This document shows positions 3,631 through 33,102 of a stretch of 64,000 bases of DNA, piece by piece (the first letter of the stretch is position 1; each line of letters opens with the position of its first letter). The translations under genes were made by a program, and so were the position numbers. The stretch lies in the IMG/VR virus record IMGVR_UViG_3300031521_001337, positions 1 to 64,000 of that record, one strand, 5' to 3'. The notes beneath the pieces are model-generated. The model was not told the origin of the DNA and ran no database searches. It saw nothing but the letters and a program-made list of their open reading frames with translations.

Positions 3631-3837
3631 TTATTTACCAATCTTTTTATATTGGTAATCTACCCCAAACAAAGCACCTGCAAAGGTGCATATTTCCCCA
3701 AAGGCTACTAAAATACTGTTATGTATAACTCCAATGGGTACTACTCAAAAACCCATAAATAAAAGGCATATCCCAGCCAACACCAATACACAAGCTACTG
3801 CTAATTGTACGTTCAATTTTGTTTCTTTCAAATTCAT
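3631..3837 (-). CDS. Small two-TM holin-like protein (1 in-frame TGA=Trp); absent from ORF track
   Basis: MNLKETKLNVQLAVACVLVLAGICLLFMGF[W]VVPIGVIHNSILVAFGEICTFAGALFGVDYQYKKIGK; resembles Bacteroidetes phage lysis-cassette membrane proteins. Confidence 0.8.
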
Positions 3838-3858
3838 TACTTACTTTTTTATTTGTTT

Positions 3859-4452
3859 CTATTTTAACACCTTTATAAATCGAAAGTCTTTTACCTCTGA
3901 ATGAGGATTTAGTTCTTTCACTTCTATAACCTGTATTGTTTGTTTTTTCTGGAACAACCTTCACAAAAAGAATTTCTTTGGTGGTTTTATTGTTTCACGC
4001 TTATCATAAGTAATTGCTATTACTTCATTTCTTACTTTCAAATCTACATTAAGCGTATCTGGTGCTTTAAATTTCAAATCTAGGCTGTACCATTCATCAC
4101 CAGTTTTAGCTTCATAATCACGAATAAACACACTGTCTTTTAATGTTACAGTATCTTTTATTTGTGTTTGGGAATTTATAAAAACCGTTTCAGTTACCTT
4201 TTTAGGTTTAAGTTTTAATTCACCTATCAACGTTTTTACTTTTAAATCAGATGAATCTTTACTATCCTTCAAATCAGCTAAAGTAAATTGATAAACTACG
4301 TTCTTTCTAACTGATGCTTTATAGTTATTGGTAGCCGTTTTTAGCTCCTCATTCAGTTGTTTTGTGTGGTTATATGAAAACCACAATAAAACCCCACAAA
4401 TCAAAGCTATTGAAGCCAGCAGTATAATTAAATATTTCTTTATTGCTATCAT
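3859..4452 (-). CDS. DUF6549-like, spanin-like lysis protein (1 TGA=Trp)
   Basis: N-terminal TM plus coiled coil; read-through gives PPKKFFL[W]RLFQKKQTIQVIEVKELNPH, ending TAG at 3859. Confidence 0.75.
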
Positions 4453-4838
4453 TACGTTTTTATTAGTTGTTTCTTATTATCACCTTCTCTATATTCTATG
4501 TGAACTCAGGCAAAATTATGTTCATCTATCAACTGTCTAAACTCAAAATGTTCTTTTATTAGCTTATAAAGTAAAGCATTATCATCACAATCTAAATCAG
4601 CACAAGTACCTAATAAATGACCAGAAGTACTTACACCACCAACCGCTTTATTTACATCTGGACTTCTAAAACCGCTGTTAATTTTAATTGGTTTACCATA
4701 CAATTCCCTCAAAGGATCTAACACATTTGTAACTAATCTTTGCAGATTAGCTACTTGTGTTTCATTAGGAATATTTACTATCTTTTTATCTGTATGAACT
4801 AGTTCTTCATACGTGAATCATTTTGATACTATTTTCAT
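4452..4838 (-). CDS. Endolysin, peptidase M15A (2 TGA=Trp)
   Basis: LDPLRELYGKPIKINSGFRS, SGHLLGTCAD; read-through restores the catalytic [W]VHIEY motif. Confidence 0.9.
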
Positions 4839-4855
4839 ATTACATTTATTTGATA

Positions 4856-5890
4856 TTATTGTAATGGTGGTTGATTTGAAACGATAGCTGAGTAAGTTTG
4901 TGACCATCCATCATTATTAAAATTCACTCTATAATAGATTGTTGAACCTACAGAAAATTTTGATATTGCACTTGATAAATCAAAATATGCTGAGCCACTT
5001 TGTACTGATGTTCCTGGACTTGTAGTATTAGCATTACAAGTAGCTGATGTGTTAGTTAGGAACTCATTAGTAGTAAAATTAGAATCTGATGCAATTTCAA
5101 ATTTGATATTTACATTATTGTTTTGAACCCTCAAATCACCTAAAATATTTAATGATGCAATTATACCCGAATTACCTGTTTTTCTATATGCAAAGAAAGT
5201 CAAATCTGTATATCTCATTGAATTTGTCCAAGGGTCTGATGGTATTACTACAGAAAAAATATAACATTCACCATCTCCATTATTAGAGATTGCATCAATA
5301 CCACTTATCCATCTTCTATCGGGTGAACTCTTATGTACAACTTTAAACCAAGCTGTTGAACCAACAGTTAAAGCACTACCACCATCGGGTGGGCTTTGTG
5401 GGTTAATTTGAAATTGAAAATATGGGTAATATCCTGTTTGGTCACTTATCATTTTTACAAAGTTTGTATGTACAAAATCATTACCATATCTATTAAAATA
5501 TACATCAAAAGTATGAGCAATTGTAACAGGTGTTTTTGTGCTCATATCTTCTTTTGCATATACTATAGGTAATCTCATATATATAGGTGAATAATAATTT
5601 ATTGAATCGCTAGTTTTATACCCATTGTTTCCAGTGAACGTTATCCAGTTGTGGTCATAATTTCTAAAAACCCCAAGCGGATAACCTTGTTTTGGGAAAA
5701 CTGTTTGATTTTCATTTTGTCTTTGATATGGTGTTTTTCCAAAGTATGCAGATTGTTCTTTATAATCGGGACTATTAAAACCATATTCATTAACTAATGA
5801 ACTCAAACACAATGTTGATACATTATGAGTATTTAAACCTAGTTCTTGCCCTACTAATGTAGTAGTAATATTTGTTGATGGTAATGCCAT
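4856..5890 (-). CDS. Tail-associated protein
   Basis: MALPSTNITTTLVGQELG N-terminus typical of genes following Bacteroidetes phage fibres. Confidence 0.6.
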   Translation of the reverse strand: MALPSTNITTTLVGQELGLNTHNVSTLCLSSLVNEYGFNSPDYKEQSAYFGKTPYQRQNENQTVFPKQGYPLGVFRNYDHNWITFTGNNGYKTSDSINYYSPIYMRLPIVYAKEDMSTKTPVTIAHTFDVYFNRYGNDFVHTNFVKMISDQTGYYPYFQFQINPQSPPDGGSALTVGSTAWFKVVHKSSPDRRWISGIDAISNNGDGECYIFSVVIPSDPWTNSMRYTDLTFFAYRKTGNSGIIASLNILGDLRVQNNNVNIKFEIASDSNFTTNEFLTNTSATCNANTTSPGTSVQSGSAYFDLSSAISKFSVGSTIYYRVNFNNDGWSQTYSAIVSNQPPLQ

Positions 5891-5891
5891 A

Positions 5892-8800
5892 TTATTTATT
5901 TTTTAAAGTATTTATTTCTTGTGTTAGTTCTTGAATTGCTCCGATTAAATATGGTATTAACTTGATATAATCAACTGATAAAAATTCATCGTTATAAATG
6001 TTATGTACTAGGTTTGGAAGTACTTCTTTTAATTGCTGAGCAATAACACCAACATCTGTTTTTTCATCCTTATTTGGGTTTAATTCTTTAGCTTTTTCAT
6101 TCCAATTATATTGCACTGGATTTAATTTATTGATTACGTCCAAAGAATTATTTAATGGTTGAATGTTTTCTTTTAACCGTTCATCAGATGCACTATAAGC
6201 TACTATTTCACCCGCTGCTATTACATTTCCATTTGAAATAAAATTACTAGCAGTAACATTACCATTGAAATGAGAATTATCACTTCCATCAATATAAAAT
6301 GGAGTTGTACCATCGGAAGCATTTCTAATTGAAAATCCAGTGTTTGAAATTCCTTGTATTGAATTTTTAATATAGTATTGCTTAACTCCTGCTTGTGAAC
6401 CTTGTAATTGTATTCTTGCCTCACCTCCAACATCATTTCTAATTAGCACAGCACTTTTGTTAATTAGAGCAATATCACCTGTTCCACTTTCAGCACTAAT
6501 ATATACTGCATTGCCAGTAAACTGTAAGTAACCTTGTCTAACTGTATTTGCTGAATTATAACCACTCAAATAAGCGGCATCAGCAATCATTTTTATTCCC
6601 TCACCTGCATAAGTATTAACAGTTCCAGTTGCCATTAAAGTACCATTCACTGCCAACTTATACCCTTGGTCAGAAATATATCCAATCCCAGTATTACCAT
6701 TAGGGCTAATATAAAACCTCCCAATATCGGGTACTGTATTAGCACTTTGGGTTGATTGAGTAGTAATTGCAAAATCTCCATAAGACTGATAATCTGTATG
6801 TATGAACCATTTCCTAGAACTACCATTAGATACATTATGGTCAAATGATAACATTCCTACCCAACCTGAACCGCTAGGCAATGATAATCTTCCGTTAATT
6901 CCCATCCCACCATTAAGAACTAATGCTCCTGTTGATGGTGATAGTGATTGAGTTGTGTTTGGTATACTTACTACTCCATTACTTTCAATAGTCAATAAGG
7001 GAGTAGTTGCATAATTAAAAGTAAAGGCTTTGTTTCCCCACTGTCCAACAGAATTAAAAATCATTGACCCATAATTATCTCCACTACTAATAAAATAGTC
7101 AAAAGAAGAACCTGAACCAAATTTTAATTTACCTGAATAATTATTAGATGGTATATTAATAGCAAAATAATCACCTCTAGCTGATGCATTTGTCCCATCA
7201 TCACTTATCAAACTATTTACAAAATTACTCCCATTCCATTTAGGAATGTAGTTTGTTGATAAACTTGATAAATCTTGTGTAGCAATATTATTTACGCCAA
7301 TAAAATTTCTAATTTGAGTACTAGTAGCAGGACTCATTCTAGCATTAGGGGCATCGTATACCATTACATAACTTACCGTAGACGCAAAATCAGCGCCATA
7401 GTATTTTAAACCATTTACCATTTCAGCATTCAAATTCCCCACCATAGTAGTAGAATTTACAGTTAATGGTGCTGTTCCAGTTGCTACTGTTGATTGTAGT
7501 TGAGTTGCATTTACTGTAGAAGTAAAAGTTACTGCTCCTGTTTTACTTAACCTAAATCTTTCTGTATAAGTATGTGCAATAGCTTCTGTATTGTATGCTC
7601 TAGCATCAGAATAATCAATTACTAAATCAGTACCACTTCCACTGTATTTGTTGGCAATTCTATAAACTCTTTGGTCAGTTCCACCATCGGCATATAAGTA
7701 CATAGCACTACCATAATCAGAATCCAATGCTCTTAATTCAACACTATGATATGTTACACCAAATTTGCCTTTTCCATACGCTGTAACATCCCCACTAATC
7801 CACATATTTGCAGATTGTGCAGAGCTATTTTGGTTTAATATGTGGTCGTTATTGTTGGTATAAGCCGATGAACCTAGACCTAACCAAGATTGTATTTGAT
7901 TTTGTGTAAAATTATAAACATATCCGTTAGAGTAACCTCCTAGTAAATTAGTAGGTACGGATTGATTAGCAGTTCCATTATATACTGTTCCTAGTGTTAT
8001 ACTAGAGCCTAAAGTCCCACTAGAAGATACAAAGTCTCCAGTGTTACTACTGGCTGCTGAACCGAATGTTCTAGTAGGTAGTGGAGTATAACCTAAAGCA
8101 GTAGTAACCATTCCTGAGTTGATACCAGTTATCCATCCACCGTAGTTACCAAGATTATTATTAAATTGACTGAGATTAGTTGGAAAATCACTAACCTGCG
8201 ACTTAGTAATGCTTATGCCAGTAGATTTATTCCATGCAATAAATATAGGGTCAGTTTCAGTAAAACTAGATAAATAGTTATGTGTATGAGTAGTTATTAG
8301 TCCAGTAAGAACTCCTTCAACTTGGGATTTAGTTATACTAGAAATATAACCACTAGGATTTGTAGAATTATAGGGAGTGTATCCTAATGCTGTAGTAACT
8401 TGAGTTCCAGTTATACCAGTAAGATATCCATATCCAGTCCAAGGAGTACCAGTAACAAATGAACCATAATTACCTAAATCATTAGTAAATTGAGATAATA
8501 ATGTAGGTTTAGAAGTTATTTCTGAATAAGCGTAGCTTGGTTTTGTAGAAGCTTTAGCTCATGAATAAACATCACTAGCTGGTAAAGTTGTAGGATAATC
8601 TGGTAAACCATATCCACTAGTTGTGGTAGGATGGCTACCTGAGTATCAATATCCAACTGATGTTCATGGAGTTCCAGAAACATATGATGTATTATCATAA
8701 GTAATAGAAGTTCCAGACATTCTAACTAGACCAGTACCATTTAATTGAGCTTGAGCTCCAATATCTAATAAAGTTAATCCATGTGGATTACCGCTATTTA

Positions 8801-10631
8801 TTTGTGAATGATCATAAGCAATTTTTCCACGATCTCCTCTATATGCTGTTGCTGAAGTTTCTCCTAAAGCTAAAGATGAGCTGATAATAGCATAAGTAGT
8901 TCCACCTCATCTATAAGTTAAATTAGTGGTTGTGTCTATGTATATCTTACCAGATTCTCCAACTGTAGGAAATAAACTTATAGAAGTATATTCTAATACA
9001 TCATCTACATAAGATGGTAATTGTGAATTTTTTACAAAGCCATTTGAATCAAGTTCTGCCAATCCATTATTAGCTCCTTTTAATGATACATCTAATTTTA
9101 AATCTAATGCACTTTGTGTAGCAGTAGATATTGGTTTCAATAAATCTGATGTATTATCTACATTATCTAAACCTACAGCAGCCTTATTTAAAGGTTGGAA
9201 TGTTTTATCACCTCTTCAGTAATCAGTAATTAATCCTGATGTTATATTAGGTTCTTTAGTATTTAAAGCTAATTGAGTTAAGATTGATATAGGTTTGTCT
9301 ATATCTCTAGTATTATCTACTTGACTTAATCCAATTTGTGCTTTAGTTGTAAAGTGAGGATTATTTGTATTAGTAATGTGAGCTTGTATATTAGCATTAG
9401 CTGGTTCTTTAGTAGCTAATTTAATATTGTTATTAGCAATAGTTTCATAAGGTGTTAAATCTTGATCATCACTATGAGCTACGTGTATTTTAGCAATATC
9501 TACATTTAATACTAAAGAATATCCAGGAATTTTTACAACTAATCCAGATAGATCTTGATCATCACTATGTGGTGCATGTAAATTTGTCTTTTCTGAATCA
9601 GTTACATAATTATCATCAGTTCCTTTTTTAGGTTCTGCATAATTTTGAACATAAGTTTCAGTTGCTAATCCTGTTATACTTGGAATATTAGGTTTATTTA
9701 ATATTAAAGTATCTCCACTAGTTGCATTTCAATCAGCATTTACATTTGCTTCTGCTCCAGTTTGAATTCCATCTAATTTATTTTTATATGTATTAGTAAA
9801 ATCATTAGTAGATAATCCTTTTCCAGTTTCTTTTGGTTGTAATACTGATAAATCTTGATCTCCAGTATTCTTACCACTTACTAAATCTAATGCTGCTTTA
9901 TTACTATGTAAATGTGTTTCTAAGAACGCGGAATCATAAGCAGCTTTTAATTCATCTGTTAAATCATTAGTACTTAATCCTTTTCCGAGAATTTTATCAA
10001 CTTTAGTTCCTAATGCTGCATATAATCCTTCTACTTCTCCAGTAGATAATGGAGCATTTAAATATAAATGAATCAAAGCATTAGTAATCGTTTTAACTAA
10101 TATTGCAAAATCATCTTGCATATAATAATTTGGGTCACTATTAAATCTCATCATTACTTCTGATAAGTATTGTAATAATTCAAACAAACTATTAATTTGA
10201 GGAAGTAATGTTGGATCGGATGGAAATAAACTTCCAGATCCTGGTGTGATACTTGGGATTGCATTTACAGATTCATATGATCCTAATACATCATTATTAC
10301 TTGGTGAATTAGTATTCAATGATAAATCTGTAGGAACTGCATTATCGTATACCGGAATATCAGTATTTAATAACATCCCATTATTTTGTATAGTAGGTGT
10401 TACTACTATTTCATTTGAAAGATTATTGAATTCTGTTGTATTCAAATCTAATAATGATGGATTATTCTGAGATTCATGTTGAATGAATTCAGAATTTAAT
10501 AAAGTAACAGTTAAAGTAGTTGATATAATATCGCTATCTTTAACTGTTACTTCATCTGGTACATCAGTTACTATTAAATTATCTACTGTAGGAATTACAA
10601 TATCTGTTAATAGTATATTGCTTTGTATCAT
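5892..10631 (-). CDS. Long tail fibre (about 1579 aa) with C-terminal peptidase S74 chaperone domain; 6 TGA=Trp
   Basis: Track ORFs 9729..10631, 8907..9140 and 5892..8111 are one frame joined only by TGA: NVNAD[W]NATSG, DY[W]RGDKT, TYR[W]GG, PASDVYS[W]AK. Ends with SDERLKENI...GVIAQ. Confidence 0.9.
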
Positions 10632-15898: not shown

Positions 15899-16171
15899 TT
15901 ATTCTTCTCTTGTTTCAGAGTTTCTATATACTTTATATACTTCTTGTCTAACATAATTTCTAACTCTTAATTCTGTGTATACATAATTTAAGAATTCTTC
16001 GTCAGTTTCACAGTCTATAGCAAATGAGGTTTGCACCATGTAACTTGGAATACCTAAAACACACTTATAACCAGGATTGAGTTTATCAACTCTTATTAAT
16101 CCTGTATAGTCAGCTTTATATCAGCTCTTTATATAATCACGAATCGCTTGCGCTAATTCTAGCTCGTCCAT
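15899..16171 (-). CDS. Conserved crAss-like protein between terminase and portal, 90 aa, 1 TGA
   Basis: MDELELAQAIRDYIKS[W]YKADYTGLIRV...EEFLNYVYTELRVR. Confidence 0.8.
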
Positions 16172-20807: not shown

Positions 20808-20823
20808 TTTAATTGTTTAGTGA

Positions 20824-22077: not shown

Positions 22078-22080
22078 TTT

Positions 22081-23529
22081 TTAATTTATATTTAATATTG
22101 TGCATCCATTAGTTAAGATCAGTGATGCTACTGATACTGCATTTTCTAAAGCTATCTTTGTTACTAGGAAAGGATCTACGATTCCCATTTCATACATGTC
22201 TCCAATTTGTCTAGTCTTATAGTCTTTACCTTCCCAGAAATTGAAAATATCTATACCATCTGCTTTATTCTCAGATAGTATTAAATTAGGCATTACCAAT
22301 ACTTTACTTAAATATTTTAAGTCTAAAAGTTTAGCAGCTCTAAGTAATGAGAAACCTCCACCAGGTAATATACCATCTGTCATAGCAGCTCTAACCGCAC
22401 AAATAGCATCTTCTAATCTATCTTTCTTTTCTTGTATTTCAACTTGAGAATATCCACCAACAAATATAGTAGCTATACCACCAATATAATTAGCTAATCT
22501 CTTTCTTTGAAACGTCATTTCAAACTCAGTTGTACTACAACTAAGTGTATTTTTTACTTCTAATATTTTAGCATCAATAACCGATTGGTTAGATTCACAT
22601 CCTATTAGATATGTAGTATCTTTTGATACTATAATTTTTTCACAAACTGAAGTAGAAGCAATACATTCGATATCATCAAGTAAAGTTTCTCTATAGATAC
22701 CATGTCCGGGTGAACTAATAAAACAAGACTTTAGATTTCCTGTATTATTATTATGTACTAGAGTTCTTAGTATTGTGGATTCCATTTTTGGAGCAATAAT
22801 AAGAAGTGCTTTCTTTTCTCTCATAGCTCTACTACATACTTCGTCAATATCTTTAATCTCAGTTAAAGGTATTCTAAAAACTGCAATTAATACATTTTCT
22901 AGTTCACATGTACTCTTAGTTGTATTAACAAAGTATGGTGAGTTATATCCTGATTCAATTTTAACTCCTTGTGAAAACACAACTGAATTATGTGTATCTT
23001 GTGAATCTTCTATAGTTACTACTCCATCTTTTGTAACTTTAAAATAAGTTTCAGCTACAAGTTTACCAAGTTCAATATCATTATTTGTAGATACTGTGGC
23101 AACTTTAATTAAGTCTTCTACACTTGTGATTGTTCTTTTATTCTTTTCCAAATATTCTATAACTTGTTTGAGTTCTTTATCTAACTCTCTACTTATAGCA
23201 ATTGGATTTTCAGTCTTATCTTTTAAAGTATTAACTAAAGTTTGAGCAAGAATAGTTGCAGTGGTTGTACCATCTCCAACATCAGTTGCTGTTTTAGTTG
23301 CAATACCTTTTATAAGTTCAATACCTGTACTAATAAATGGATCATCATCGTTTACATATTTTGCAACGGTTGCTCCATCCTTTGTTATATACACTCCTGA
23401 GAGTCCTTTGATTATAACATTTTTTCCATTAGGTCCGAATGTTGTTGACACAGCATCGCCTATTAAATTCACTCCTTCAATTAAGATGTCTTTTGCATCT
23501 CCATTAAATAAAACATTTTTCATTATCAT
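22081..23529 (-). CDS. groEL: GroEL-like chaperonin (short, 482 aa)
   Basis: TFGPNGKNV, ITKDGATVA, GDGTTTAT, EKKDRLEDA, GILPGGG, GIVDP. Confidence 0.93.
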   Translation of the reverse strand: MIMKNVLFNGDAKDILIEGVNLIGDAVSTTFGPNGKNVIIKGLSGVYITKDGATVAKYVNDDDPFISTGIELIKGIATKTATDVGDGTTTATILAQTLVNTLKDKTENPIAISRELDKELKQVIEYLEKNKRTITSVEDLIKVATVSTNNDIELGKLVAETYFKVTKDGVVTIEDSQDTHNSVVFSQGVKIESGYNSPYFVNTTKSTCELENVLIAVFRIPLTEIKDIDEVCSRAMREKKALLIIAPKMESTILRTLVHNNNTGNLKSCFISSPGHGIYRETLLDDIECIASTSVCEKIIVSKDTTYLIGCESNQSVIDAKILEVKNTLSCSTTEFEMTFQRKRLANYIGGIATIFVGGYSQVEIQEKKDRLEDAICAVRAAMTDGILPGGGFSLLRAAKLLDLKYLSKVLVMPNLILSENKADGIDIFNFWEGKDYKTRQIGDMYEMGIVDPFLVTKIALENAVSVASLILTNGCTILNIN

Positions 23530-23542
23530 TACATTTTCATTG

Positions 23543-23818
23543 TTATCATTTGCCTAAAGGGCAGTGTGCATCTGGTACTCGTGTCTTGGATCTAAGGATA
23601 CATCCGCATCCATTCTTAAATCCTGGTTTATCTGTTGTAGAAACTTCATTTGTTTCCGGATTTACATATAATTCAGAATTACATGTTTCTCCAAACAAAC
23701 TATCATTATATAACAATTTACATTGTTTACAATGAATCATTCGTTTGGTGTGTGTTTCTGCTTCTTTATTCATTAGTTCATTGAAGAACCCTTGTGCTAC
23801 TTTATTGATAATAGACAT
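23543..23818 (-). CDS. Cys-rich small protein; terminal TGA=Trp then TAA
   Basis: CxxC, GCGC, CPLGK[W]; TGA-TAA tandem restores the family CPxGKW ending. Confidence 0.8.
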
Positions 23819-24249
23819 AATATAAATCCTATTGCACTACTAATACCCATAAATAATGGAGTTCTTGCAGCTTGTTTTTTATATTTAGTTTTTAAGACTT
23901 CTTGAGATTTTCCCCATTTGTCTGCTTTATTAAACTCTGTAACAGTATAACCTATAATAGAATCTTTTTCTATTACTATATTTTTAAAGTTATCTAATTT
24001 TTTATTTTTTTCAATAATTATAGAATCCTTTATTTTAGATTGTTGTATTTCGATGTTATATAACTCTCGAGTTTCTTCCAATCCAGTAACATATAATCTA
24101 ACGTTAGTCAAATCAGTTTTTGTGTAATTGTAAGTAATAATAGTATCAGGATTACTTTTTCATACTGTTCACTTTGGTGACGATTGAGTCCATCCAACGA
24201 GCGTGCTCATAAGCAGAAGCACTGTTAATACTTTTAATTTTCTTATCAT
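23797..24249 (-). CDS. Secreted/membrane protein, spanin-like, 2 TGA
   Basis: Read-through adds signal peptide MIRKLKVLTVLLLMSTLVGW; C-terminal TM; overlaps upstream gene. Confidence 0.6.
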
Positions 24250-24523
24250 AGTACATTAATATTATTGGTTTTATATCTCCAAGAGAATCATTCTTTTTCT
24301 CTAGTACTCATATAGTGCTATCTGCTTTTCTGTTCAATAATTCATATGCTTTTATTTTCTTATTACAACTGTCAACCTTTAATTGTTCAATCTTATAATT
24401 ATTATCTAAGACTTTGTATTTGTCGTTCTGTATTGAGAATGCTATACACACCAATAGGAATACAAAAATTCCGACGGCTATTTTAAAATACAATTTTTTC
24501 TCTGGATTTTTTAAATTCTTCAT
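24152..24523 (-). CDS. TM plus coiled-coil protein, i-spanin-like, 1 TGA
   Basis: N-terminal TM; KADSTI[W]VLEKKND continues to TAA at 24152. Confidence 0.6.
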
Positions 24524-25409
24524 TTTTAATTTGGGTTTTATAATATCCAAGCATTCTTTCCACATCTGCTTTTAAATAATCGCACTCATAGTTTTTTACA
24601 TTACCGTCGTGATCAATGTGAATAAGTAAGAGCATCTTTATATTAAAAAGAGGATTAGCTTTTTGAATCATCCAAGCATATAAACTTAATTGCATAGAAT
24701 AATGCATGAAGTTACAATCATCAAGGTTGTTTAAAGGATATTTCATTTTAGATGATCTCTTTAATTTACGGTCGAAATAAGATTTAGTATCCATCTTCTT
24801 TCCAGTCTTATAATCTAAAATGTAGACATCATATCCGTCTACTATTATTAAATCTGCTTGACCTGCAATTCTAAGTTCCCCATCATCGGATACTCTACTT
24901 AAAAGTAATTCTGGATAAACACCTTGTTCTCCAGGTTTTAGATTGTTAGTAATGTCTGTTTTAAACGAACCTCCCAAATTTAAATATTGTAACTCAGCAG
25001 TCTTTCCATCTAAGTGTCCATCTTCCATTTGCTTATGGATTGCTGTACCTCTTATACAAGACTCATCTCGTTTTCTATCCCATTCTTTTAGAATTTCGGC
25101 TTTTCTTTCTTCAAACGTTTCCTTAGTTATACCAAAGGATTCGTAGTGTTCATCTTTAAAATTTTTTCTATCTAAAAGAGTTGGTTTAATTGTTTTAAAT
25201 TCATCTTCTGTTATGAGTGATTCTAATGTTTTATAAGCACTCCAGAAGATTGGATCGAATGTTCCAAATTTATGGATTAGTGTAGTTGCTGATATACACG
25301 CTTGATTGGTTTTCTTTGTCCAATATTTGTGGAGCTCGTCATTATACATTACGCAGCTATCTTCCTTATCTACTTTCAATTCATTAAATTTTACATTCGC
25401 ATTATCCAT
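24483..25409 (-). CDS. PD-(D/E)xK nuclease (crAss conserved)
   Basis: RGTAIHK, IAGQADL, ILDYKT, YSMQLSLY. Confidence 0.9.
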   Translation of the reverse strand: MDNANVKFNELKVDKEDSCVMYNDELHKYWTKKTNQACISATTLIHKFGTFDPIFWSAYKTLESLITEDEFKTIKPTLLDRKNFKDEHYESFGITKETFEERKAEILKEWDRKRDESCIRGTAIHKQMEDGHLDGKTAELQYLNLGGSFKTDITNNLKPGEQGVYPELLLSRVSDDGELRIAGQADLIIVDGYDVYILDYKTGKKMDTKSYFDRKLKRSSKMKYPLNNLDDCNFMHYSMQLSLYAWMIQKANPLFNIKMLLLIHIDHDGNVKNYECDYLKADVERMLGYYKTQIKNEEFKKSREKIVF

Positions 25410-26090: not shown

Positions 26091-26801
26091 TTAGATTCCG
26101 TTCTCTCTTAGTTTAGATAAAATTATAGGAATGATTGGATTTCTCACACAATCCTCATCTTTAAATTCTATTGATCCAATAATATCTGAATCAGTAAATA
26201 TCTCAATAACTTTCGCTAAACACGATTCGCTTTTCTTACGTCTATCTATTTGTTCACTATCTCCAAGAAGAATGTATTTTGAGTTTTCTCCAATTCTAGT
26301 CATCATTGTTTTAAAAGTATGATTATCTATGTTTTGTGCTTCATCGATTATTACAATAGCATTATCAATTGATAAACCTCTAATAAAAGCTAGTGGTAAT
26401 ACTTCAATTATTTTTTTATCAAGTAAGTTCTGTGCAGATTTATCTCCGCAGATCTTATCAATATTTCACATATAAGACATTATAAATGGTTCCATTTTCT
26501 GTTCCATTCCACCTTTAAGGAATCCTATTTCTTCTCCGGGAATAGTAGTTACTGACTTTACAAGAATAACCTTTTTATAGATTGAACCTAATAATGATAA
26601 AGCTGTTGCTAATGTTACATATGTCTTACCTGTTCCAGCAGGACCTGTAGCAATGATAATCTCTCTATCATTTATAAGGTTAATAAACTCTTGTTGTTTC
26701 TCATTCTTTGGTTTGAAATCATTTACTAAGTTAGATTGTTTTTCGGGTAATCTGTTTTTCTCGCGTTTCTCAGTACGCTTTTCTCGTGTGCCTTTTCCCA
26801 T
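26091..26801 (-). CDS. phoH: PhoH-family ATPase, 1 TGA=Trp
   Basis: GPAGTGKT, IGFLKG, SYM[W]NID, PLAFIRG, IIDEAQN, TRIGENSK, GDSEQID all in one frame. Confidence 0.93.
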
Positions 26802-26817
26802 AAATTGTTTGTTAAGT

Positions 26818-29082
26818 TTATAATCTAGTGATCTCACATGAACCTCCGCTACAAGCTTGGGCCGCTGTGTCACTAATGTCTTTATATGTTGGCTTGTTTA
26901 GAATCTCTCCAAAGTCAACTGGTTTAAATTGTCTATTAATTACTTCCCATTTATGAAATAGATGTACATCTTTTAAACAATATACAGTCTTTTGTAAATC
27001 TCCTCCAAAGAAGTTGTTAGCAAATTTCTTTGCTCTAGCCAACCAATATTTCTTAAGCATTACTTGTTCTCTTGTTCCAGTAATAGGAACTGATTTATCT
27101 TTAATCATATCACAAGCAATCCAAAGATTGTCGTTAAAATAATGTAGTCCATCAACAATTAATCCAGATGCGAATAATGCACCTTTTCCATAGTCACTCA
27201 TTAGTTGATCTAATGAAGATACAGATGTGAATGGAGCTTGTGTAAAATCTTTATCTCCGTAATCAGATATAAAGGATACTGCTGTAAAGTCATGTTTGTT
27301 ATTCCAAATATAATCTATAACAGCTTTTTGATCATCAACAATAACAGTATTAGATGTATTATGATTCACATCAGGATATGCACATAGATCGCGATTAGTT
27401 CCCTCATTTACCCAATTTAATTGTACTAGTTTTATTAGTTCAAGATGTTTAACACCTTTTACGTCTTTCTTATATAATCCCTCAATAGGATTCTCAATAG
27501 GAACAAATACAACATAATCAGATCCAGTACTTGACCAAACACTTTCTTCTAAAAGATAAGACATATGTTTGTTCAACCATTTGGCTGTATCGTTTTCTTT
27601 GTTTAGTTGCATGATTCTAAAATACTTTTGAGAATGTTCAGGATGAATACCTGACGCAGTTCCCAATACTACAGATGCATTACCCGATGGTTTAACACAT
27701 GTCGTTCTAGCAGCTTGATTAATTCCAATCTTTTCAGCTATTGTCTTGTTTGTTTCTTTAACTAAAGATGCACCATGTTTTAAAATGTCGGTGTTAAACA
27801 ACATTGGGTTATTCATCCATCCTGTAACAGATACTCCTAATAGAGCTTCTTGTCTTACAATCTTTTCAGTGGTTTCTCCAAGATAAGGAAATGATGTATA
27901 ACCTGCTTGTAGTGTTCCAATGATTGCACCAGCAATACACGCAGAATAAAAATTCTCAACTATATCACATTGTTCTGCATTAATCTCACAAAGATTACAG
28001 AATGCTACACCTAGTTTGTCTTCATTATCTCTAATAAATTCTTCTATCTTATCATAAGATACATCATTTATTTTTGTACTAATTTTTGAATGAAGAATTG
28101 GGTGTTTAAGAATTTCGAAACAAGGATTGAACATATCAAACCATGAGTTAGCAAATGCAAAACCAATGTCAGAATATCCATCATTCATTTTAACAAGCTT
28201 TTCAAATTCTTCTTTTCCGGTTAAACTTCTAAGAAGTAACACCGAATTATTTGTTCTTCCACGTTGTGGGTTATTAGTTCTCCAGTTACCAACTTTAGCA
28301 TTAATCATTTCATCATCATTTGGATCAACAATCATGTTAAGAGCAGAACGTCTAACTCCACCTGATAATACTGCGTCTGAGATGTGACATAGAATATCAC
28401 ATACAGCGATTGGTCTTAGTTTAGTGCCTTCTGATGTAATCCATTTATTTAAGAACTCTTCGATCTTTTCAAATGATTGTTTTAAACCATCAGGTCCTGG
28501 AGCTTTGAATCCTCCACTAATGAATGCACCTTTTTCTCTTACTTCTGAATAGTCAAATTTAATTTCGTATCCTGCATACTCTGGAAAAGGTTGTTTATCA
28601 ATGAAGAATGATGACATCAATACACCAAATGCATCAGACCATCCTTCAATTGAATCGGGAACAATAAATGTTTTAGTCCCTTTAGTTCTTTTATTTACTT
28701 GTGAAATGTTATTCACAAAAGGAATAAGTAATCCTAATCCTACACCACAACCACTTAATGCTAAGTAAAATACTTCTTGGAATATTTTATTTCTAGCAGC
28801 ATACATAGATGAACAATTATAAAGTCTTGCATTGTTACGTTCGATCTGCTCATTTCTATACTGTAGATTTCGTTGTGAAGCTAGTACCGTTTTAGATTGC
28901 ATATATTTCAATGCGTATTCTAATTCTTTACTTAGGTCTACATCTGCATAATGATCTTTATGACCATTGATTATAGACTCACATGCTTCATTCCATGTTT
29001 CGTATCGACCTTCTTCTGGTCTCCACTTTAAGTAGTCAGAGTGAAGTTTTAAGTCACTCAAAAATTTCTTTCCTGCGTTCAT
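26818..29082 (-). CDS. nrdJ: Class II (adenosylcobalamin-dependent) ribonucleotide reductase
   Basis: YNCS, GCGVG, GGVRRSA, NPCFEI, FCNLCE, TCVKPSGN, C-terminal ACSGGSC. Confidence 0.88.
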   Translation of the reverse strand: MNAGKKFLSDLKLHSDYLKWRPEEGRYETWNEACESIINGHKDHYADVDLSKELEYALKYMQSKTVLASQRNLQYRNEQIERNNARLYNCSSMYAARNKIFQEVFYLALSGCGVGLGLLIPFVNNISQVNKRTKGTKTFIVPDSIEGWSDAFGVLMSSFFIDKQPFPEYAGYEIKFDYSEVREKGAFISGGFKAPGPDGLKQSFEKIEEFLNKWITSEGTKLRPIAVCDILCHISDAVLSGGVRRSALNMIVDPNDDEMINAKVGNWRTNNPQRGRTNNSVLLLRSLTGKEEFEKLVKMNDGYSDIGFAFANSWFDMFNPCFEILKHPILHSKISTKINDVSYDKIEEFIRDNEDKLGVAFCNLCEINAEQCDIVENFYSACIAGAIIGTLQAGYTSFPYLGETTEKIVRQEALLGVSVTGWMNNPMLFNTDILKHGASLVKETNKTIAEKIGINQAARTTCVKPSGNASVVLGTASGIHPEHSQKYFRIMQLNKENDTAKWLNKHMSYLLEESVWSSTGSDYVVFVPIENPIEGLYKKDVKGVKHLELIKLVQLNWVNEGTNRDLCAYPDVNHNTSNTVIVDDQKAVIDYIWNNKHDFTAVSFISDYGDKDFTQAPFTSVSSLDQLMSDYGKGALFASGLIVDGLHYFNDNLWIACDMIKDKSVPITGTREQVMLKKYWLARAKKFANNFFGGDLQKTVYCLKDVHLFHKWEVINRQFKPVDFGEILNKPTYKDISDTAAQACSGGSCEITRL

Positions 29083-29996: not shown

Positions 29997-30014
29997 ATTT
30001 ATTCTATCATTTTG

Positions 30015-30087
30015 CACCCTTGGTAAGACTCGAACTCACACTTACAAATTTTGAAGATTTGTGTGCTAACCATTACACTACAAAGGT
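30015..30087 (-). tRNA. Opal suppressor tRNA, anticodon UCA (predicted Trp-charged)
   Basis: ACCTTTG TA GTGT AATGGTTA GCAC A CAAAT CT-TCA-AA ATTTG TAAGT GTGAG TTCGAGT CTTAC CAAGGGT G; full cloverleaf with A1-U72 and G73, short variable loop. Confidence 0.93.
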
Positions 30088-31112: not shown

Positions 31113-31467
31113 TAAAGTTTTCGTTTGTAATGTTAATGTCTGTTATAGTTACTATACCATTTATTGCTTTTTGTAGAGTTAGTAAACTAGTAAGTGATGG
31201 TTTAATAGATCTAAGTAAGTCGGATAAATCTTTGTTTATAGACCCTATTATTTGTGAAACGGTTAAACTATTTTGTTTATAATCTAACTTAATCTCAATA
31301 GAATAAGGAGCTTTGTTTGTGATTAATGATGGGATTGTAATTTTTACACCAAGTTCGTTTAGTGTTTCAATAGGTTCTAGTAAGAATCTATCATTAATAC
31401 CAACTTCTTTTAGTATCGAATTTAATCGTGCAACTGTTGTGTAGTTTTGATAAGAAATTATTTCCAT
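31102..31467 (-). CDS. Hypothetical protein
   Basis: 121-aa ORF overlapping next gene. Confidence 0.6.
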   Translation of the reverse strand: MEIISYQNYTTVARLNSILKEVGINDRFLLEPIETLNELGVKITIPSLITNKAPYSIEIKLDYKQNSLTVSQIIGSINKDLSDLLRSIKPSLTSLLTLQKAINGIVTITDINITNENFNAN

Positions 31468-31572
31468 AGTTTATTTATATATAATTGTGTGTGCACCAGG
31501 GTAGTGCGGTTTATCTTTATATTCTTGGTAGAAGTACCAGTTGTCGTAAAAGTTTTTAAGATCGTTTTGCAT

Positions 31573-32010
31573 TTAAGAAATATTTAATTGTTTAAGTAAT
31601 ACTTTTAGTTCCGATTTATTTTTAATTAGTCCATTAAATAAACATTCATCTTGTGATGCATCTATTATATGTTTAGATGAATATATACTTAATCCAAATC
31701 CTCTATCATGTAATTTTATATCTTTATAAAAATATTGAGATGCTCCGTATAAATGTTCATGAAATTTAAACCCTAAATCTTCTATATCTTCTTTATCTAA
31801 GTATTTAACTCTTATACAATCTCTCATTATTTTAAATGGAATCTCCATAAATTCAAAAGTCATATTTACATCAAGATGTGTTTTAATCCATATAATATCA
31901 TCTTCATGATCTATTGATCTAATAAGTAACATATCAAAATTTATAAATTCTTCGTATTCAAATCCTACATGAAATTCTTCTACTTTTGGTGTATAATATT
32001 TATTATTCAT
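31573..32010 (-). CDS. Hypothetical phage protein
   Basis: KYYTPKVEEFHVGFEYE...IRVKYLDKEDIEDLGF. Confidence 0.7.
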   Translation of the reverse strand: MNNKYYTPKVEEFHVGFEYEEFINFDMLLIRSIDHEDDIIWIKTHLDVNMTFEFMEIPFKIMRDCIRVKYLDKEDIEDLGFKFHEHLYGASQYFYKDIKLHDRGFGLSIYSSKHIIDASQDECLFNGLIKNKSELKVLLKQLNIS

Positions 32011-32266
32011 TATTAAATTCTTCTATTTCTCCTCGAAGTTCTTGGAGTGCTGCATATAAACTATCTGTTACTTGTTTAAATTTATATAGTTTGTTTACAT
32101 CTTTTGTAGATAAGTCTAAATCAATAAGACTTGCTTCTGATAGTCTTGTCATTTCTGATCTAACTTTAGAAAGTATACAATCAATATTATATATTTTATC
32201 TAGTATATCATCTGTTAGTTCATATAGTCTAACCTCTGCTGTTAGATCTTCTTTTATAAGTGCCAT
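32003..32266 (-). CDS. Hypothetical protein
   Basis: 87-aa ORF overlapping neighbours. Confidence 0.55.
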   Translation of the reverse strand: MALIKEDLTAEVRLYELTDDILDKIYNIDCILSKVRSEMTRLSEASLIDLDLSTKDVNKLYKFKQVTDSLYAALQELRGEIEEFNNE

Positions 32267-32475
32267 TGTTTTATGTGGTCTGTTAGTGATTTATTAAATT
32301 CTTCCATTCCTCTTTGTCCTGTGAAACATCCTTTGGATATTTCATAGATTCCTTCTCCCAAATACTTAGGATAGTCGAATGGATTATCTGGCATAGAAGC
32401 TAGAACTTTTTCTACATCTTCTACTGTTAGTTTATTATAGTGTTGTACTGTTGCTTTGTCTAAGTTATTCTCCAT
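32254..32475 (-). CDS. Hypothetical protein
   Basis: 73-aa ORF overlapping neighbour. Confidence 0.55.
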   Translation of the reverse strand: MENNLDKATVQHYNKLTVEDVEKVLASMPDNPFDYPKYLGEGIYEISKGCFTGQRGMEEFNKSLTDHIKQWHL

Positions 32476-32730
32476 TTAATTTATTTATTAGTTTGTCTAC
32501 TTTATTTAGTTTACGTAATGCATCGTTAACATTAAGATCTGGATCACATTCTAATTCGATAAGTAATCTAATCTTATAATTGTTAAGCTTCTTGAGAGTT
32601 CTCTTTAATTGTTTGTCCATATTCTTTGTAAAAATTAGTCCATTTATTTATATAATATTCATCATTCTCTGGAGTTGATCTTGTAATTATTATTTCTTGA
32701 TAATTAGATAGAAATAATGTTATTGTAGAT

Positions 32731-33102
32731 TTAGTCTTCTTTGTATTTAGTATTGTTATCATTTAACATTTTAATCATTCATATCATACTATCATCATCT
32801 GTGTAATCTGAGAAATCGTTATAACCTCTTCGGGTATATCATTCATACATTCAACTATCCCGTTTAACTCATAAAAAGGATTGTGTAGCTCCGAGTTCTA
32901 TTCCTATTTTCTCTCTTAGTTCCTGCATTTTAGTTCCAAGTCCTTGTTCTCTTTCGTTATTCTCAACACTTAAAGAGTTTAAGTAAACTGATTTTGGATC
33001 ATCATGGAATCAATACATCCTAGCATAAGCTTTCCCTTCAATTTCCATAATGTATAATTCATCATGGTCGTCATTACGAACGAAGTGTTGTATTACTTCC
33101 AT
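32731..33102 (-). CDS. GNAT-family acetyltransferase, 123 aa, 5 TGA=Trp; absent from ORF track
   Basis: VYLNSLSVENNEREQGLGTKM (motif A), FL[W]V, [W]YTRRGY (motif B). Confidence 0.8.

What the first reader, a model, noticed from the sequence alone, without database searches (positions are those of the whole stretch)
3631..33102. TGA reassigned to Trp in the late arm while host and early genes use the standard code
Dozens of in-frame TGA codons fall at family-conserved Trp positions: portal YEVE[W], M15 [W]VH, NUMOD1 GGFI[W]KY, CPLGK[W], FISUMP YN[W]. Direct internal proof: a tail-fibre repeat reads GTP-TGA-T at 8664 and GTP-TGG-T at 8439. The late genes checked end in TAA or TAG. Trp-rich early genes (42592, 51409, 56706) use only TGG. 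Stop recoding is known in crAss-like phages. Here it sits beside a host gene that reads normally in code 11, consistent with a translational lock on virion and lysis genes.
Basis: partly seen in the sequence, partly recalled or inferred. Interest (0 to 1): 0.8.

Follow-up and report, generated by a model that had tools for sequence, protein, structure and literature searches.

The report
TGA read as tryptophan, two phages
The in-frame TGA codons are real and stand for tryptophan, a trick already known in some phages; but the stretch joins two different recoded phages, a large crAss-like one that carries the UGA-reading tRNA and a small temperate one beside the host gene that has no detectable tRNA.

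Summary
Observation confirmed. Minus-strand genes between 3631 and 33102 hold 63 in-frame TGA against 60 TGG, and all end in TAA or TAG. Reading TGA as sense raises open-frame cover from 70% to 91%. The plus arm has 0 in-frame TGA against 123 TGG. In diverged relatives the window's TGA codons align with TGA (292), TGG (164), Tyr (52) and Phe (33), so TGA means Trp. The host flank (hisB, 99% identical to a Paludibacter MAG) belongs to a standard-code lineage.

Correction: the window is a composite. Positions 1592-6235 (lysis genes, fibre end) belong to phage B, a 28.7-kb temperate HK97-type phage with a serine integrase. B is also TGA-recoded (49 TGA, 42 TGG) but has no detectable tRNA. Positions 8181-64000 belong to phage A, a crAss-like phage of about 176.5 kb. 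The two share a 100% identical 1,945-bp fibre segment (6236-8180), where the assembly most likely crossed over. The arm is not purely late genes: the reductase (0 TGA, 14 TGG), a nuclease and a chaperonin avoid TGA. Block-wise TGA-to-Trp recoding is already described: a new member of a known kind.

The parts
36..1082 (+). Host hisB (bifunctional imidazoleglycerol-phosphate dehydratase / histidinol phosphatase), cut off at the contig start. No TGA, 3 TGG, ends in TAG, GC 38%.
   Evidence: Pfam IGPD 1e-59. 99% aa and 96.9% nt identity to Paludibacter sp. MAG JAFLKK010000008.1.
1253..1342 (.). 90-bp att-associated segment. It is shared by the window, the MAG (L042) and phage B's integrase-proximal site. 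All three diverge right after ...GACCCCATA. The free form reads CCCCATATGGGG, a palindrome.
   Evidence: The joint 1342->1595 is at phage depth in 4 runs.
1438..1592 (.). Repeat R1: a 155-bp copy (2 mismatches) of phage A's intergenic stretch 34327-34481, with three TCAAATGATACG units. The contig's join between the host side and phage B runs through it.
   Evidence: Loose ends at 1438 and 1592 match the 34297-34326 and 34482-34511 context.
1592..6235 (-). Left end of phage B (28.7-kb temperate HK97-type phage). Genes: 207-aa (1673-2296), 305-aa (2695-3612), holin-like 68-aa (3631-3837, 1 TGA), 197-aa (3859-4452, 1 TGA), M15 endolysin (4452-4907, 2 TGA), 344-aa (4856-5890, 0 TGA/5 TGG), and the C-terminal end of the S74 fibre.
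   Evidence: The identical block sits downstream of B's tape measure and fibre N-terminus in contigs of 28,788 and 20,587 bp (L227, L230) and in L225 of 28,926 bp. Pfam M15_3. TGA134 aligns with Trp in 4 of 5 standard-code homologs.
6236..8180 (-). 1,945-bp segment 100% identical in the fibre genes of phage A and phage B (0 TGA, 7 TGG). It is the probable crossover point of the assembly.
   Evidence: L235 against the window and L227. Contigs and unitigs break at about 6265, 8054 and 8180. Codon counts.
5892..10631 (-). Tail-fibre ORF as assembled (1579 aa under code 4). The N-terminal 691 aa are phage A's (6 TGA, 0 TGG). The C-terminal 888 aa contain no TGA (10 TGG) and include the Peptidase_S74 chaperone domain; they are shared or phage B's.
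10654..13738 (-). Four phage A virion-module genes: a FISUMP-domain protein (10654-12132; 9 TGA, 1 TGG), 256-aa (6 TGA), 203-aa (4 TGA) and 92-aa.
   Evidence: Fib_succ_major on JGI's call. Relatives show TGA or TGG at these positions.
13701..15896 (-). Phage A portal, 731 aa, 2 in-frame TGA (15404 and 14942).
   Evidence: Its three pieces hit phrog_6547 at profile positions 47-192, 200-304 and 373-763. Relatives at these positions: TGA 40, TGG 20, Tyr 5.
16116..18224 (-). Phage A large terminase, 702 aa, 10 TGA, 4 TGG.
   Evidence: Pieces hit phrog_6681 at 95-209 and 517-730. Relatives: TGA 143, TGG 61, Tyr 38, Phe 32. Nearest named relatives are crAss-like phages at 25-37% identity.
18203..21420 (-). 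GIY-YIG homing endonuclease (18203-19036, 4 TGA), 191-aa and 395-aa proteins (1 and 2 TGA), and a second GIY-YIG endonuclease (20824-21420, no Trp codons).
21721..25409 (-). GroES-like (21721-22077) and GroEL-like (22081-23529; 0 TGA, 1 TGG) genes, small genes with 1-2 TGA each, and a PD-(D/E)XK nuclease (24483-25409; 0 TGA, 4 TGG).
26091..26873 (-). PhoH-like ATPase, 260 aa, 1 TGA at 26468.
   Evidence: Pieces hit phrog_170 at 34-154 and 158-278. They map to 3B85 residues 5-83 and 101-203 with no gap at the TGA.
26818..29082 (-). Class II (B12-dependent) ribonucleotide reductase, 754 aa, 0 TGA, 14 TGG.
   Evidence: tblastn 44-46% identity to phage ribonucleoside-triphosphate reductases. Two relatives have TGA at 8 of these Trp positions.
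30014..30087 (-). tRNA with anticodon UCA (reads UGA). 74 nt, class I, A1-U72, G73, anticodon loop CUUCAAA. Same strand as the recoded genes and upstream of 53 of phage A's 59 in-frame TGAs.
   Evidence: ARAGORN. Rfam tRNA 62.9 bits. Comparison with phage A's 24 other tRNAs. Position counts.
32731..33102 (-). 123-aa gene with 5 in-frame TGA and no TGG, lying upstream of the tRNA.
   Evidence: All five TGAs are kept as TGA in three relatives.
33103..34208 (-). First two genes of the minus arm: a replication-initiation/DnaD-like HTH protein and a 103-aa protein. Neither contains a Trp codon (0 TGA, 0 TGG).
34327..34481 (.). Repeat R2 in the divergent intergenic region between phage A's two arms.
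34749..64000 (+). Phage A plus arm. In the window: 45 genes, 123 TGG, 0 in-frame TGA. Stops are TAA 36, TAG 6, TGA 3. It continues on the same strand to at least 121 kb.

Best explanation
TGA is a tryptophan codon in a defined set of genes of two different phages that were assembled into one contig.

Phage A is crAss-like, about 176.5 kb, and occupies window 8181-64000. It uses the standard code in its plus arm, where TGA is absent in frame and ends about 10% of genes. It uses TGA for 59 of 104 Trp codons in its minus arm, which holds the terminase, portal, fibre, other virion genes, PhoH, homing endonucleases and small genes.

Phage A encodes the decoder itself: a class-I tRNA with anticodon UCA at 30014-30087, carrying the acceptor features of bacterial tRNA-Trp. 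It lies on the same strand as the recoded genes and upstream of most of them.

Inferred mechanism. In a standard-code Paludibacter cell, host RF2 stops translation of these genes at UGA. Once the phage tRNA is transcribed, charged by host TrpRS and abundant enough to compete with RF2, full-length products can be made. Genes that must work before that point (reductase, nuclease, chaperonin), and the highly expressed capsid protein, keep TGG.

Phage B is a 28.7-kb temperate HK97-type phage with a serine integrase. Window 1592-6235 is its left end, lying next to host hisB. B uses TGA for 49 of 91 Trp codons on both strands and spares its integrase. No tRNA gene is detectable in B.

The window passes from B to A inside a 1,945-bp fibre segment that is identical in both (6236-8180). 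This is most likely an assembly crossover.

Shown here: the codon pattern, TGA = Trp, the tRNA and its features, the host lineage's standard code, and the two-genome layout.
Inferred: charging by TrpRS, the timing of expression, competition with RF2, and the lock function.
For: **Read-through is required.** Open-frame cover rises from 70% to 91% only when TGA is sense, and only on the minus arm. Pieces flanking TGAs hit one family at consecutive profile positions for the portal, terminase and PhoH. The PhoH pieces map without a gap onto structure 3B85.

**TGA means Trp.** In relatives below 97% identity, the window's TGA codons align with TGA 292, TGG 164, Tyr 52, Phe 33 and Leu 17. The relatives' TGA codons align with window TGA 292, Trp 90 and Phe 75. 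The endolysin's TGA134 aligns with Trp of the W-x-H motif in 4 of 5 standard-code homologs.

**The tRNA.** ARAGORN and Rfam both find it. Among phage A's 24 other tRNAs, only Trp(CCA) and Asp share A1-U72 plus G73. The loop CUUCAAA differs from A's tRNA-Trp loop CUCCAAA only at position 34.

**Arm contrast.** 0 of 123 against 59 of 104 Trp codons are TGA (p = 3e-26). The plus arm beyond the window has 218 TGG and code 4 adds only 2% cover.

**The host uses the standard code**.

**Composite layout.**
- A second head module of HK97 type lies next to the integrase.
- The same lysis/att/integrase block sits behind two different upstream contexts.
- B is assembled on its own as contigs of 28,788 and 28,926 bp.
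- The 213-kb contig holds the shared segment three times, with an A-specific continuation after the second copy, as predicted.
- The lengths add up: 205,306 = 176,538 + 28,768.
- Unitigs break at about 6265 in all four runs.
- A has its own lysozyme and a crAss-type capsid protein after its fibre.

**B has no tRNA** by ARAGORN, relaxed ARAGORN, or Rfam at E<=1.
Against: - There is no protein or RNA evidence. The amino acid inserted is inferred from alignments.
- The tRNA's body resembles phage tRNA-Arg(UCU) as much as tRNA-Trp, and it is only 60% identical to A's own tRNA-Trp.
- Six TGAs lie in genes upstream of the tRNA, including five in one gene. A simple 'tRNA first, recoded genes after' order therefore does not hold for all genes.
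- Several fibre TGAs (codons 301-691) align with varied residues in the one or two relatives available.
- PhoH's TGA position is Trp only within this clade: the flanking YM[TGA]N lines up with the family's PLYDAL motif (Asp) as I recall that motif; the residue itself was not displayed.
- The uncrossed arrangement of phage A (A fibre start, shared segment, A-specific end) was not seen in any contig I fetched. All four contigs that enter the shared segment from A's side leave into B. A real A::B cointegrate is therefore not excluded.
- The join between the host side and phage B passes through a 155-bp repeat. It differs from free B's sequence over 1343-1625.
Confidence: 0.8

Rival explanations
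1. One real 205-kb replicon. Phage A carries B as an integrated or recombined module (an A::B cointegrate formed by homologous exchange at the 1.9-kb fibre segment). The whole thing lysogenises Paludibacter at hisB through B's serine integrase. The window would then be a faithful piece of one temperate jumbo phage with two packaging modules.
For: Four assemblies join A's fibre start to B's lysis/att/integrase block. A 205,452-bp contig matches the 205.3-kb period of the 213-kb contig. The uncrossed A arrangement was never retrieved. A and B occur together in at least 16 peat runs.
Against: - B closes on itself in contigs of 28.8-28.9 kb.
- Other samples give contigs that stop exactly at the edges of the shared segment, as expected for a repeat that short reads cannot resolve.
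- 205,306 is exactly A plus B, with the repeat traversed twice.
- Two terminases, two portals and two capsid types in one virion genome would be unprecedented.
- 205 kb exceeds A's own genome by 16%, which makes packaging implausible.
Confidence: 0.17
2. The cell, not the phage, supplies UGA decoding: either the host uses code 4, or it carries its own opal suppressor.
For: Phage B has no tRNA. hisB in the window has only 3 Trp codons, so on its own it says little.
Against: In 28 Paludibacter/Bacteroidales host loci, 29 of 177 long ORFs end in TGA, 728 Trp codons are TGG, and code 4 adds no cover. Phage A's plus arm avoids in-frame TGA completely (341 TGG), which would be pointless in a code-4 cell. 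No UGA-to-Trp reassignment is reported for Bacteroidota (abstract of 10.64898/2025.12.01.691617 as listed).
Confidence: 0.03
3. TGA encodes something other than Trp: selenocysteine (ARAGORN labels the tRNA SeC), glycine (code 25), or arginine from a tRNA-Arg(UCU)-derived suppressor.
For: ARAGORN's label. The tRNA's D-arm and anticodon stem are nearly identical to a Vibrio phage tRNA-Arg(UCU). tRNAscan-SE gave the same Trp-or-Arg ambiguity for phage Lera (PMC12386605).
Against: The substitution spectrum at TGA sites is Trp, then Tyr, Phe and Leu, with Gly 6 and no Arg among 645 aligned codons. The tRNA is 74 nt with a 7/5 acceptor/T arm and a 4-nt variable loop, so it is not Sec-like. Position 20 is U rather than the A20 used by ArgRS (read; established tRNA identity rules).
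Confidence: 0.02
4. The TGAs are inactivating mutations in a decaying prophage.
For: Part of the window lies next to a host gene.
Against: There are no in-frame TAA or TAG codons and no frameshifts. TGAs are kept at the same codons across relatives with 58-77% identical proteins and interchange only with TGG or aromatic residues. The phages sit at depths of 26-73, mostly in the non-integrated form.
Confidence: 0.01

Closest known systems
Zeta crAss-like phage Lera and relatives (PMC12386605); dual-coded crAss-like phages of Yutin et al. 2021 (PMC7886860) and Mgcod (10.1101/2022.06.29.495998)
   Same: A large Bacteroidales phage of crAss type in which TGA means Trp in the terminase, structural and lysis genes. 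It carries a tRNA-Sup(TCA) whose isotype prediction wavers between Trp and Arg, has a large tRNA array, and uses the two codes in separate genome blocks.
   Different: Phage A is only distantly related (portal and terminase 25-37% identical to named crAss-like phages). It comes from peat rather than gut, and Paludibacter is its inferred host. Its closest relatives carry structurally unrelated UCA tRNAs.
Agate and Jade TGA-recoded phages and the 'code switch regulates late genes' model (Borges et al., 10.1101/2021.08.26.457843)
   Same: Code 4 in a standard-code host. In-frame TGA is concentrated in structural and lysis genes. The suppressor tRNA is phage-encoded. TGA is rare as a stop.
   Different: No RF1 or TrpRS code-change operon was seen in the 120 kb of phage A that I inspected. 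Some metabolic genes inside the recoded arm are TGA-free, while relatives recode them.
Garnet and Topaz recoded prophages (Borges et al.); small recoded temperate gut phages of 28.6 +/- 3.7 kb (10.1101/2023.08.07.552389)
   Same: Phage B is a small (28.7 kb) temperate phage recoded across most of its genome, with an integrase free of the recoded codon, found next to standard-code host genes.
   Different: Garnet and Topaz recode TAG to Gln; B recodes TGA to Trp. B uses a large serine recombinase, comes from peat Paludibacter, and co-occurs and has recombined with a second phage recoded in the same way.

Membership tests
Stop-codon-recoded (code 4) phages in standard-code hosts | Conserved genes are broken by in-frame TGA under code 11 and restored to full length with TGA as sense | tested here: met
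   for phage A. for phage B (cover 73% to 93%).
Stop-codon-recoded (code 4) phages in standard-code hosts | In-frame TGA aligns with Trp in homologs | tested here: met
   (TGA/TGG 71%; 84% when Tyr and Phe are added). (Trp in 4 of 5 standard-code endolysins).
Stop-codon-recoded (code 4) phages in standard-code hosts | Phage-encoded suppressor tRNA with anticodon UCA | tested here: met
   Phage A: 30014-30087. Not met for phage B: no tRNA found. The literature reports that only about 35% of code-4 genomes have one detectable.
Stop-codon-recoded (code 4) phages in standard-code hosts | The host uses TGA as a stop | tested here: met
   Loci from Paludibacter and related MAGs. The actual host cell's RF2 and tRNA set could not be inspected.
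Stop-codon-recoded (code 4) phages in standard-code hosts | Recoded codons concentrated in late, structural or lysis genes; early or lysogeny genes free of them | tested here: met
   Phage A: 59 of 104 against 0 of 123. Phage B: integrase 0 TGA and 4 TGG, but genes on both strands carry TGA. Timing is inferred from gene content only.
Stop-codon-recoded (code 4) phages in standard-code hosts | Trp is actually inserted at UGA during infection | not testable with these tools
   Needs proteomics or tRNA charging assays.
Crassvirales-like phages | crAss-type major capsid protein, portal and large terminase | tested here: met
   PF23898 Crass_capsid on the 476-aa protein just beyond the shared segment (outside the window). 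Portal and terminase are nearest to crAss-like phages at 25-37% identity. Formal placement in the order was not tested with a tree.
Bacterial tRNA-Trp (as source of the UCA tRNA) | A1-U72 pair, G73 discriminator, C35 and A36 | tested here: met
   C34 is replaced by U34, as in known UGA-decoding tRNA-Trp. Overall similarity to phage A's tRNA-Trp is only 60%, and the body resembles tRNA-Arg(UCU).
tRNA-Sec (selC) | At least 90 nt, 8/5 acceptor/T arms, long variable arm, 6-bp D stem | tested here: not met
   74 nt, 7/5 arms, 4-nt variable region. Some relatives' UCA tRNAs are 93-100 nt with a long extra arm.
Temperate phage integrating by a large serine recombinase (phage B) | Resolvase, Recombinase and Zn-ribbon domains next to an att site; prophage junction with host DNA | tested here: inconclusive
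   The domains are present. The same hisB junction appears in the window and in an independent MAG. The sequence to the right of the presumed crossover does not match free B, and the right-hand junction was not found.

The most novel reading that the evidence does not exclude
Phage B is recoded to TGA = Trp in nearly all its genes but has no decoder of its own. It may depend on the UCA tRNA of the co-infecting crAss-like phage A to translate its virion and lysis genes. A lysogen of B would then stay locked until A infects. This would be helper-dependence at the level of the genetic code. The identical 1.9-kb fibre segment and the 155-bp copy of A's regulatory intergenic region next to B's attachment site would be traces of that partnership.
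Probability: 0.15. Interest if true: 0.8.

Novelty: new member of a known kind. Interest (0 to 1): 0.4.

Why it matters
Block-wise TGA-to-Trp recoding with a phage tRNA is established, so the core finding adds a member rather than a principle. It is an environmental member: from peat, with a Paludibacter host.

Three points are useful beyond that:
1. It is a warning for annotation. A single 'viral genome' of 205-213 kb in public collections is most likely two recoded phages fused through a shared fibre segment. Its 'prophage' status belongs to the small one.
2. Two unrelated phages of one host share the same unusual code and have recently exchanged DNA, and only one carries the decoder. That makes dependence on a shared code a testable idea.
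3. Close relatives differ in which genes are recoded and in the architecture of the UCA tRNA. The system therefore turns over quickly.

Tried and rejected
- I first took the 754-aa TGA-free ORF for the terminase. tblastn showed it is a reductase.
- I looked for the right-hand prophage junction with the host aminotransferase gene that follows hisB in phage-free relatives. No hit in viral contigs.
- blastn of the tRNA against E. coli genomes found nothing. Against phages it gave a mix of tRNA-Trp and tRNA-Arg, and one hit (IAS virus) was on the wrong strand.
- PhoH as a family-wide test of Trp: it shows the protein is continuous, but the position is Trp only within the clade.
- I read the contig's wrap-around as one 205-kb circular temperate jumbo phage. 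I abandoned this after finding the second head module and B's own closed contigs.
- One look-up failed because a TTG start does not translate to Met. Two failed because public gene calls read through TGA.
- PHROG and Pfam gave nothing for the large plus-arm proteins (885 and 717 aa), the 395-aa minus-arm protein, or most of the A-specific genes.
- I searched for an uncrossed phage A contig. Only contigs that break at the repeat came back.
- Selenocysteine, glycine, arginine, a code-4 host and pseudogenisation were considered and rejected (see the rival explanations).

Full report
**1. The observation**

Under code 11 the minus strand between about 3.6 and 34.2 kb is fragmented. Stop-to-stop frames of at least 100 aa cover 70.3% of it. 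With TGA as sense they cover 91.2%. Letting TAG through gives 73.1%. The plus arm (34.7-64 kb) goes only from 73.0% to 74.3%.

Gene models with TGA as sense give 39 minus-strand genes with 63 in-frame TGA and 60 TGG. All end in TAA (36) or TAG (3). The plus arm in the window has 45 genes, 123 TGG and no in-frame TGA. Three of its genes end in TGA. Fisher's test on the two arms gives p about 4e-24.

**2. Read-through and the identity of the amino acid**

Pieces on either side of TGAs hit the same PHROG family at consecutive profile positions:
- portal: 47-192, 200-304, 373-763
- PhoH: 34-154, 158-278
- large terminase: 95-209 ... 517-730

The PhoH pieces map to residues 5-83 and 101-203 of structure 3B85, with exactly one residue left for the TGA.

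I fetched 121 related viral loci and ran tblastn with X at each TGA. In relatives below 97% identity the window's TGA sites align with TGA 292, TGG 164, Tyr 52, Phe 33 and Leu 17, with small numbers of other residues. The window's TGG sites align with TGG, TGA and Tyr in the same way. The relatives' TGA codons align with window TGA 292, Trp 90 and Phe 75. This is the substitution spectrum of Trp, not of Gly, Arg, Ser or Cys.

Outside the clade, TGA134 of the M15 endolysin aligns with the Trp of the W-x-H motif in 4 of 5 standard-code homologs. Weak points remain. The fibre's six TGAs and a few others align with varied residues in the one or two relatives available. The TGA after CPLGK is followed at once by TAA.

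**3. The decoder**

ARAGORN finds one tRNA in the window, at 30014-30087 on the minus strand, with anticodon UCA. It labels it SeC. Rfam scores it 62.9 bits as an ordinary tRNA. It is 74 nt with 7/5 acceptor/T arms, a 4-nt variable region, A1-U72, G73 and the anticodon loop CUUCAAA.

Walking along the genome showed that phage A also has a tmRNA and about 24 further tRNAs. Among those, only tRNA-Trp(CCA) and tRNA-Asp share A1-U72 plus G73. A's tRNA-Trp loop is CUCCAAA. A1-U72, G73, C35 and A36 are the known identity elements of bacterial tRNA-Trp (established knowledge).

The tRNA's body, however, resembles phage tRNA-Arg(UCU). The same ambiguity is reported for phage Lera (PMC12386605). It has U rather than A at position 20, and the alignments show no Arg at TGA sites.

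The tRNA lies upstream of 53 of phage A's 59 in-frame TGAs. Six TGAs, five of them in the gene at 32731-33102, lie upstream of it.

**4. The host**

ORF 36-1082 is HisB. It is 99% identical in protein, and 96.9% in DNA over 1-1348, to a Paludibacter sp. MAG. In 28 Paludibacter/Bacteroidales host loci, ORFs of at least 150 aa end in TAA 110, TAG 38 and TGA 29 times, all 728 Trp codons are TGG, and code 4 adds only 1% cover. The host lineage therefore uses the standard code.

Phage-free relatives have a phosphodiesterase, an aminotransferase and a UDG gene after hisB. The window and the MAG have phage genes there instead.

**5. The window is a composite**

*Wrap-around.* The leftmost phage gene occurs twice on the source contig, IMGVR_UViG_3300031521_001337 (213,486 bp; the window is its first 64 kb). 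Its right end repeats window 1592-8180 at 99.9% identity. The sequence that precedes 1592 in that wrapped form encodes an HNH endonuclease with five TGAs, a tRNA_SAD-domain protein and a 573-aa large serine recombinase with 0 TGA and 4 TGG.

*A second head module.* Beyond the integrase lies a complete HK97-type module: TerS, TerL, portal, S78 protease and MCP. It is fragmented under code 11 and intact when TGA is sense.

*Two contexts.* The block from the fibre end through the lysis genes, att site and integrase has two upstream contexts. One is crAss-like: portal, FISUMP protein, 1579-aa fibre. The other is siphovirus-like: major tail protein, 1070-aa tape measure, 704-aa protein, 957-aa fibre.

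*Phage B on its own.* A 26,950-bp contig runs from the lysis block through the integrase and the head and tail genes to the fibre start. Phage B reconstructs to 28,660 bp and is assembled alone as contigs of 28,788 and 28,926 bp.

*A prediction, tested.* If the large contig is A plus B joined through a shared repeat, it should contain B's tail genes, followed by the repeat, followed by A-specific DNA. It does. B's tail genes lie at about 186-187 kb. They run into a stretch 100% identical to window 8180-6236. After that come 6.8 kb found in neither B nor the window.

That A-specific stretch holds the fibre end, a 367-aa gene with 6 TGA, a lysozyme with 2 TGA, a 332-aa gene and the crAss-type capsid protein (476 aa, 0 TGA, 7 TGG).

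*Supporting numbers.* The lengths add up: 205,306 = 176,538 + 28,768. In other samples contigs stop at the edges of the shared segment. Logan unitigs break at about 6265 in all four runs laid.

*Caveat.* I never retrieved the uncrossed phage A arrangement, and all four contigs that enter the repeat from A's side leave into B. A real cointegrate keeps some probability, which I put at about 0.17.

**6. The host junction**

A 90-bp segment (1253-1342) is shared by the window, the MAG and B's integrase-proximal site. All three diverge after ...GACCCCATA. Free B continues so as to form the palindrome CCCCATATGGGG.

In four peat runs the free form (joint 1342->1595) has the phage's own depth: 30, 25, 26 and 82. 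The hisB-side path has a depth of 9-18. Most copies of B are therefore not integrated, or B is more abundant than this host strain.

Between 1343 and 1625 the window differs from free B. That stretch contains a 155-bp copy of phage A's intergenic region 34327-34481. The exact attL is thus unresolved, and the join runs through a repeat. The independent MAG with a diverged B-like prophage at the same site supports real integration. That prophage keeps the TGA at codon 31 of its holin-like gene.

**7. Phage B's code**

Coding cover rises from 73% to 93% with TGA as sense. B has 49 TGA and 42 TGG, and every gene ends in TAA or TAG. TGA occurs in head, tail and lysis genes and in the small opposite-strand genes. 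The integrase, the 344-aa gene and the 305-aa gene are among those without TGA. No tRNA was found by ARAGORN (default or relaxed), by Rfam at gathering score or at E<=1, or by a scan for a UCA anticodon stem-loop. A and B co-occur in at least 16 peat runs.

**8. Phage A beyond the window**

The plus arm continues to at least 121 kb. It carries AAA ATPases, NAD salvage genes, a tRNA array, a tmRNA, Fmt, metallophosphatases, a radical SAM enzyme, RNase H, ClpP, helicases, DnaB and a primase. Code 4 adds 2% cover there. There are 218 TGG, and 12 of 110 genes end in TGA. In phage A, then, TGA is a stop in some plus-arm genes and Trp in the minus arm. I saw no RF1 or TrpRS.

**9. Comparison with what is known**

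All of the following are published:
- Block-wise dual coding in crAss-like phages (PMC7886860; 10.1101/2022.06.29.495998).
- TGA = Trp with a tRNA-Sup(TCA) in Zeta crAss-like phages (PMC12386605).
- The late-gene and lysogeny-switch model, and recoded prophages in standard-code hosts (10.1101/2021.08.26.457843).
- Small recoded temperate phages (10.1101/2023.08.07.552389).
- Recoded jumbo phages, which are rare outside guts (PMC13037316).

The finding is therefore a new member of a known kind. Its specific features are the peat/Paludibacter setting and the pairing of two phages recoded in the same way, only one of which carries the decoder.

**10. Verdict**

TGA = Trp is strongly supported. 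The single-phage picture of a host gene, an early arm and a late arm is only partly right. The 'lock' function remains a plausible, untested inference.

Noticed in passing
window 53952-54037 (+): A second tRNA-like gene (Rfam tRNA, 47.5 bits) that ARAGORN misses. It has an 18-nt anticodon loop instead of 7 and a U1-U72 mismatch, so no anticodon can be assigned.
   Followed up: partly
window 37201-37278 (+), 39692-39760 (+), 58909-58970 (+): Two RAGATH-1 hammerhead ribozymes and one pistol ribozyme, all above Rfam gathering scores, in intergenic positions of phage A's plus arm.
   Followed up: no
window 1438-1592 and 34327-34481: A 155-bp repeat (2 mismatches) with three TCAAATGATACG units. One copy lies in phage A's divergent intergenic region, the other between host-side DNA and phage B. 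It may be an operator-like element shared by the two phages.
   Followed up: partly
L127:3564-3656, L128:8540-8634, L030:15-110, L012:576-675: Close relatives of phage A carry UCA-anticodon tRNAs of quite different build: 93-100 nt with a long extra arm, some with a long D stem. Their TGA codons still align with Trp and Phe. The decoder appears to have been replaced several times within one clade.
   Followed up: partly
window 26818-29082: The reductase uses only TGG (14 codons) here. Two relatives have TGA at 8 of the same Trp positions, so the set of recoded genes differs between close relatives.
   Followed up: partly
L204:12808-13260 (phage B, next to attP): A 150-aa protein with a tRNA_SAD domain (the editing-type domain of Thr/Ala-tRNA synthetases). 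It has no TGA and sits beside the integrase of the tRNA-less recoded phage.
   Followed up: no
L218:7724-8130; L219:5705-17931: Phage A encodes a tmRNA, about 24 tRNAs (including Trp-CCA, Arg-UCU, an odd 'Tyr-AUA' and one with a 6-nt loop), a methionyl-tRNA formyltransferase and a YqeY-like protein.
   Followed up: partly
L235:17755-19185 (= L245:3495-4925): Phage A's crAss-type major capsid protein has 0 TGA and 7 TGG although it sits among recoded genes. This may be avoidance of TGA in the most highly expressed late protein.
   Followed up: no
window 49630-49632, 60458-60460, 63389-63391: Three plus-arm genes end in TGA, with the next in-frame TAA or TAG 7-11 codons later. Once the suppressor is active they would gain short C-terminal extensions.
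   Followed up: partly
L217, L223, L226 (JGI contig Ga0302285_10000006, 205,452 bp): The public gene calls on this contig read through TGA (1579-aa fibre, 537-aa TerL). Calls on other contigs of the same phages use code 11 and are fragmented. Annotation of the same sequence is therefore inconsistent across records.
   Followed up: partly
L048 (Paludibacter MAG JAAFGX010000019.1), 4.4 kb after hisB: Another Paludibacter genome has about 4.4 kb of extra DNA between hisB and the conserved downstream gene. The site may be a recurrent insertion hotspot.
   Followed up: no
window 18203-19036, 20824-21420, 29430-30017; L204 circular-form HNH; L235:20206-21099: There are many homing endonuclease genes (GIY-YIG and HNH) scattered through both phages. 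Several contain TGA at conserved Trp positions (GFI[W]KY, NLE[W]). One HNH gene is present in free phage B and absent from the hisB-linked variant.
   Followed up: partly
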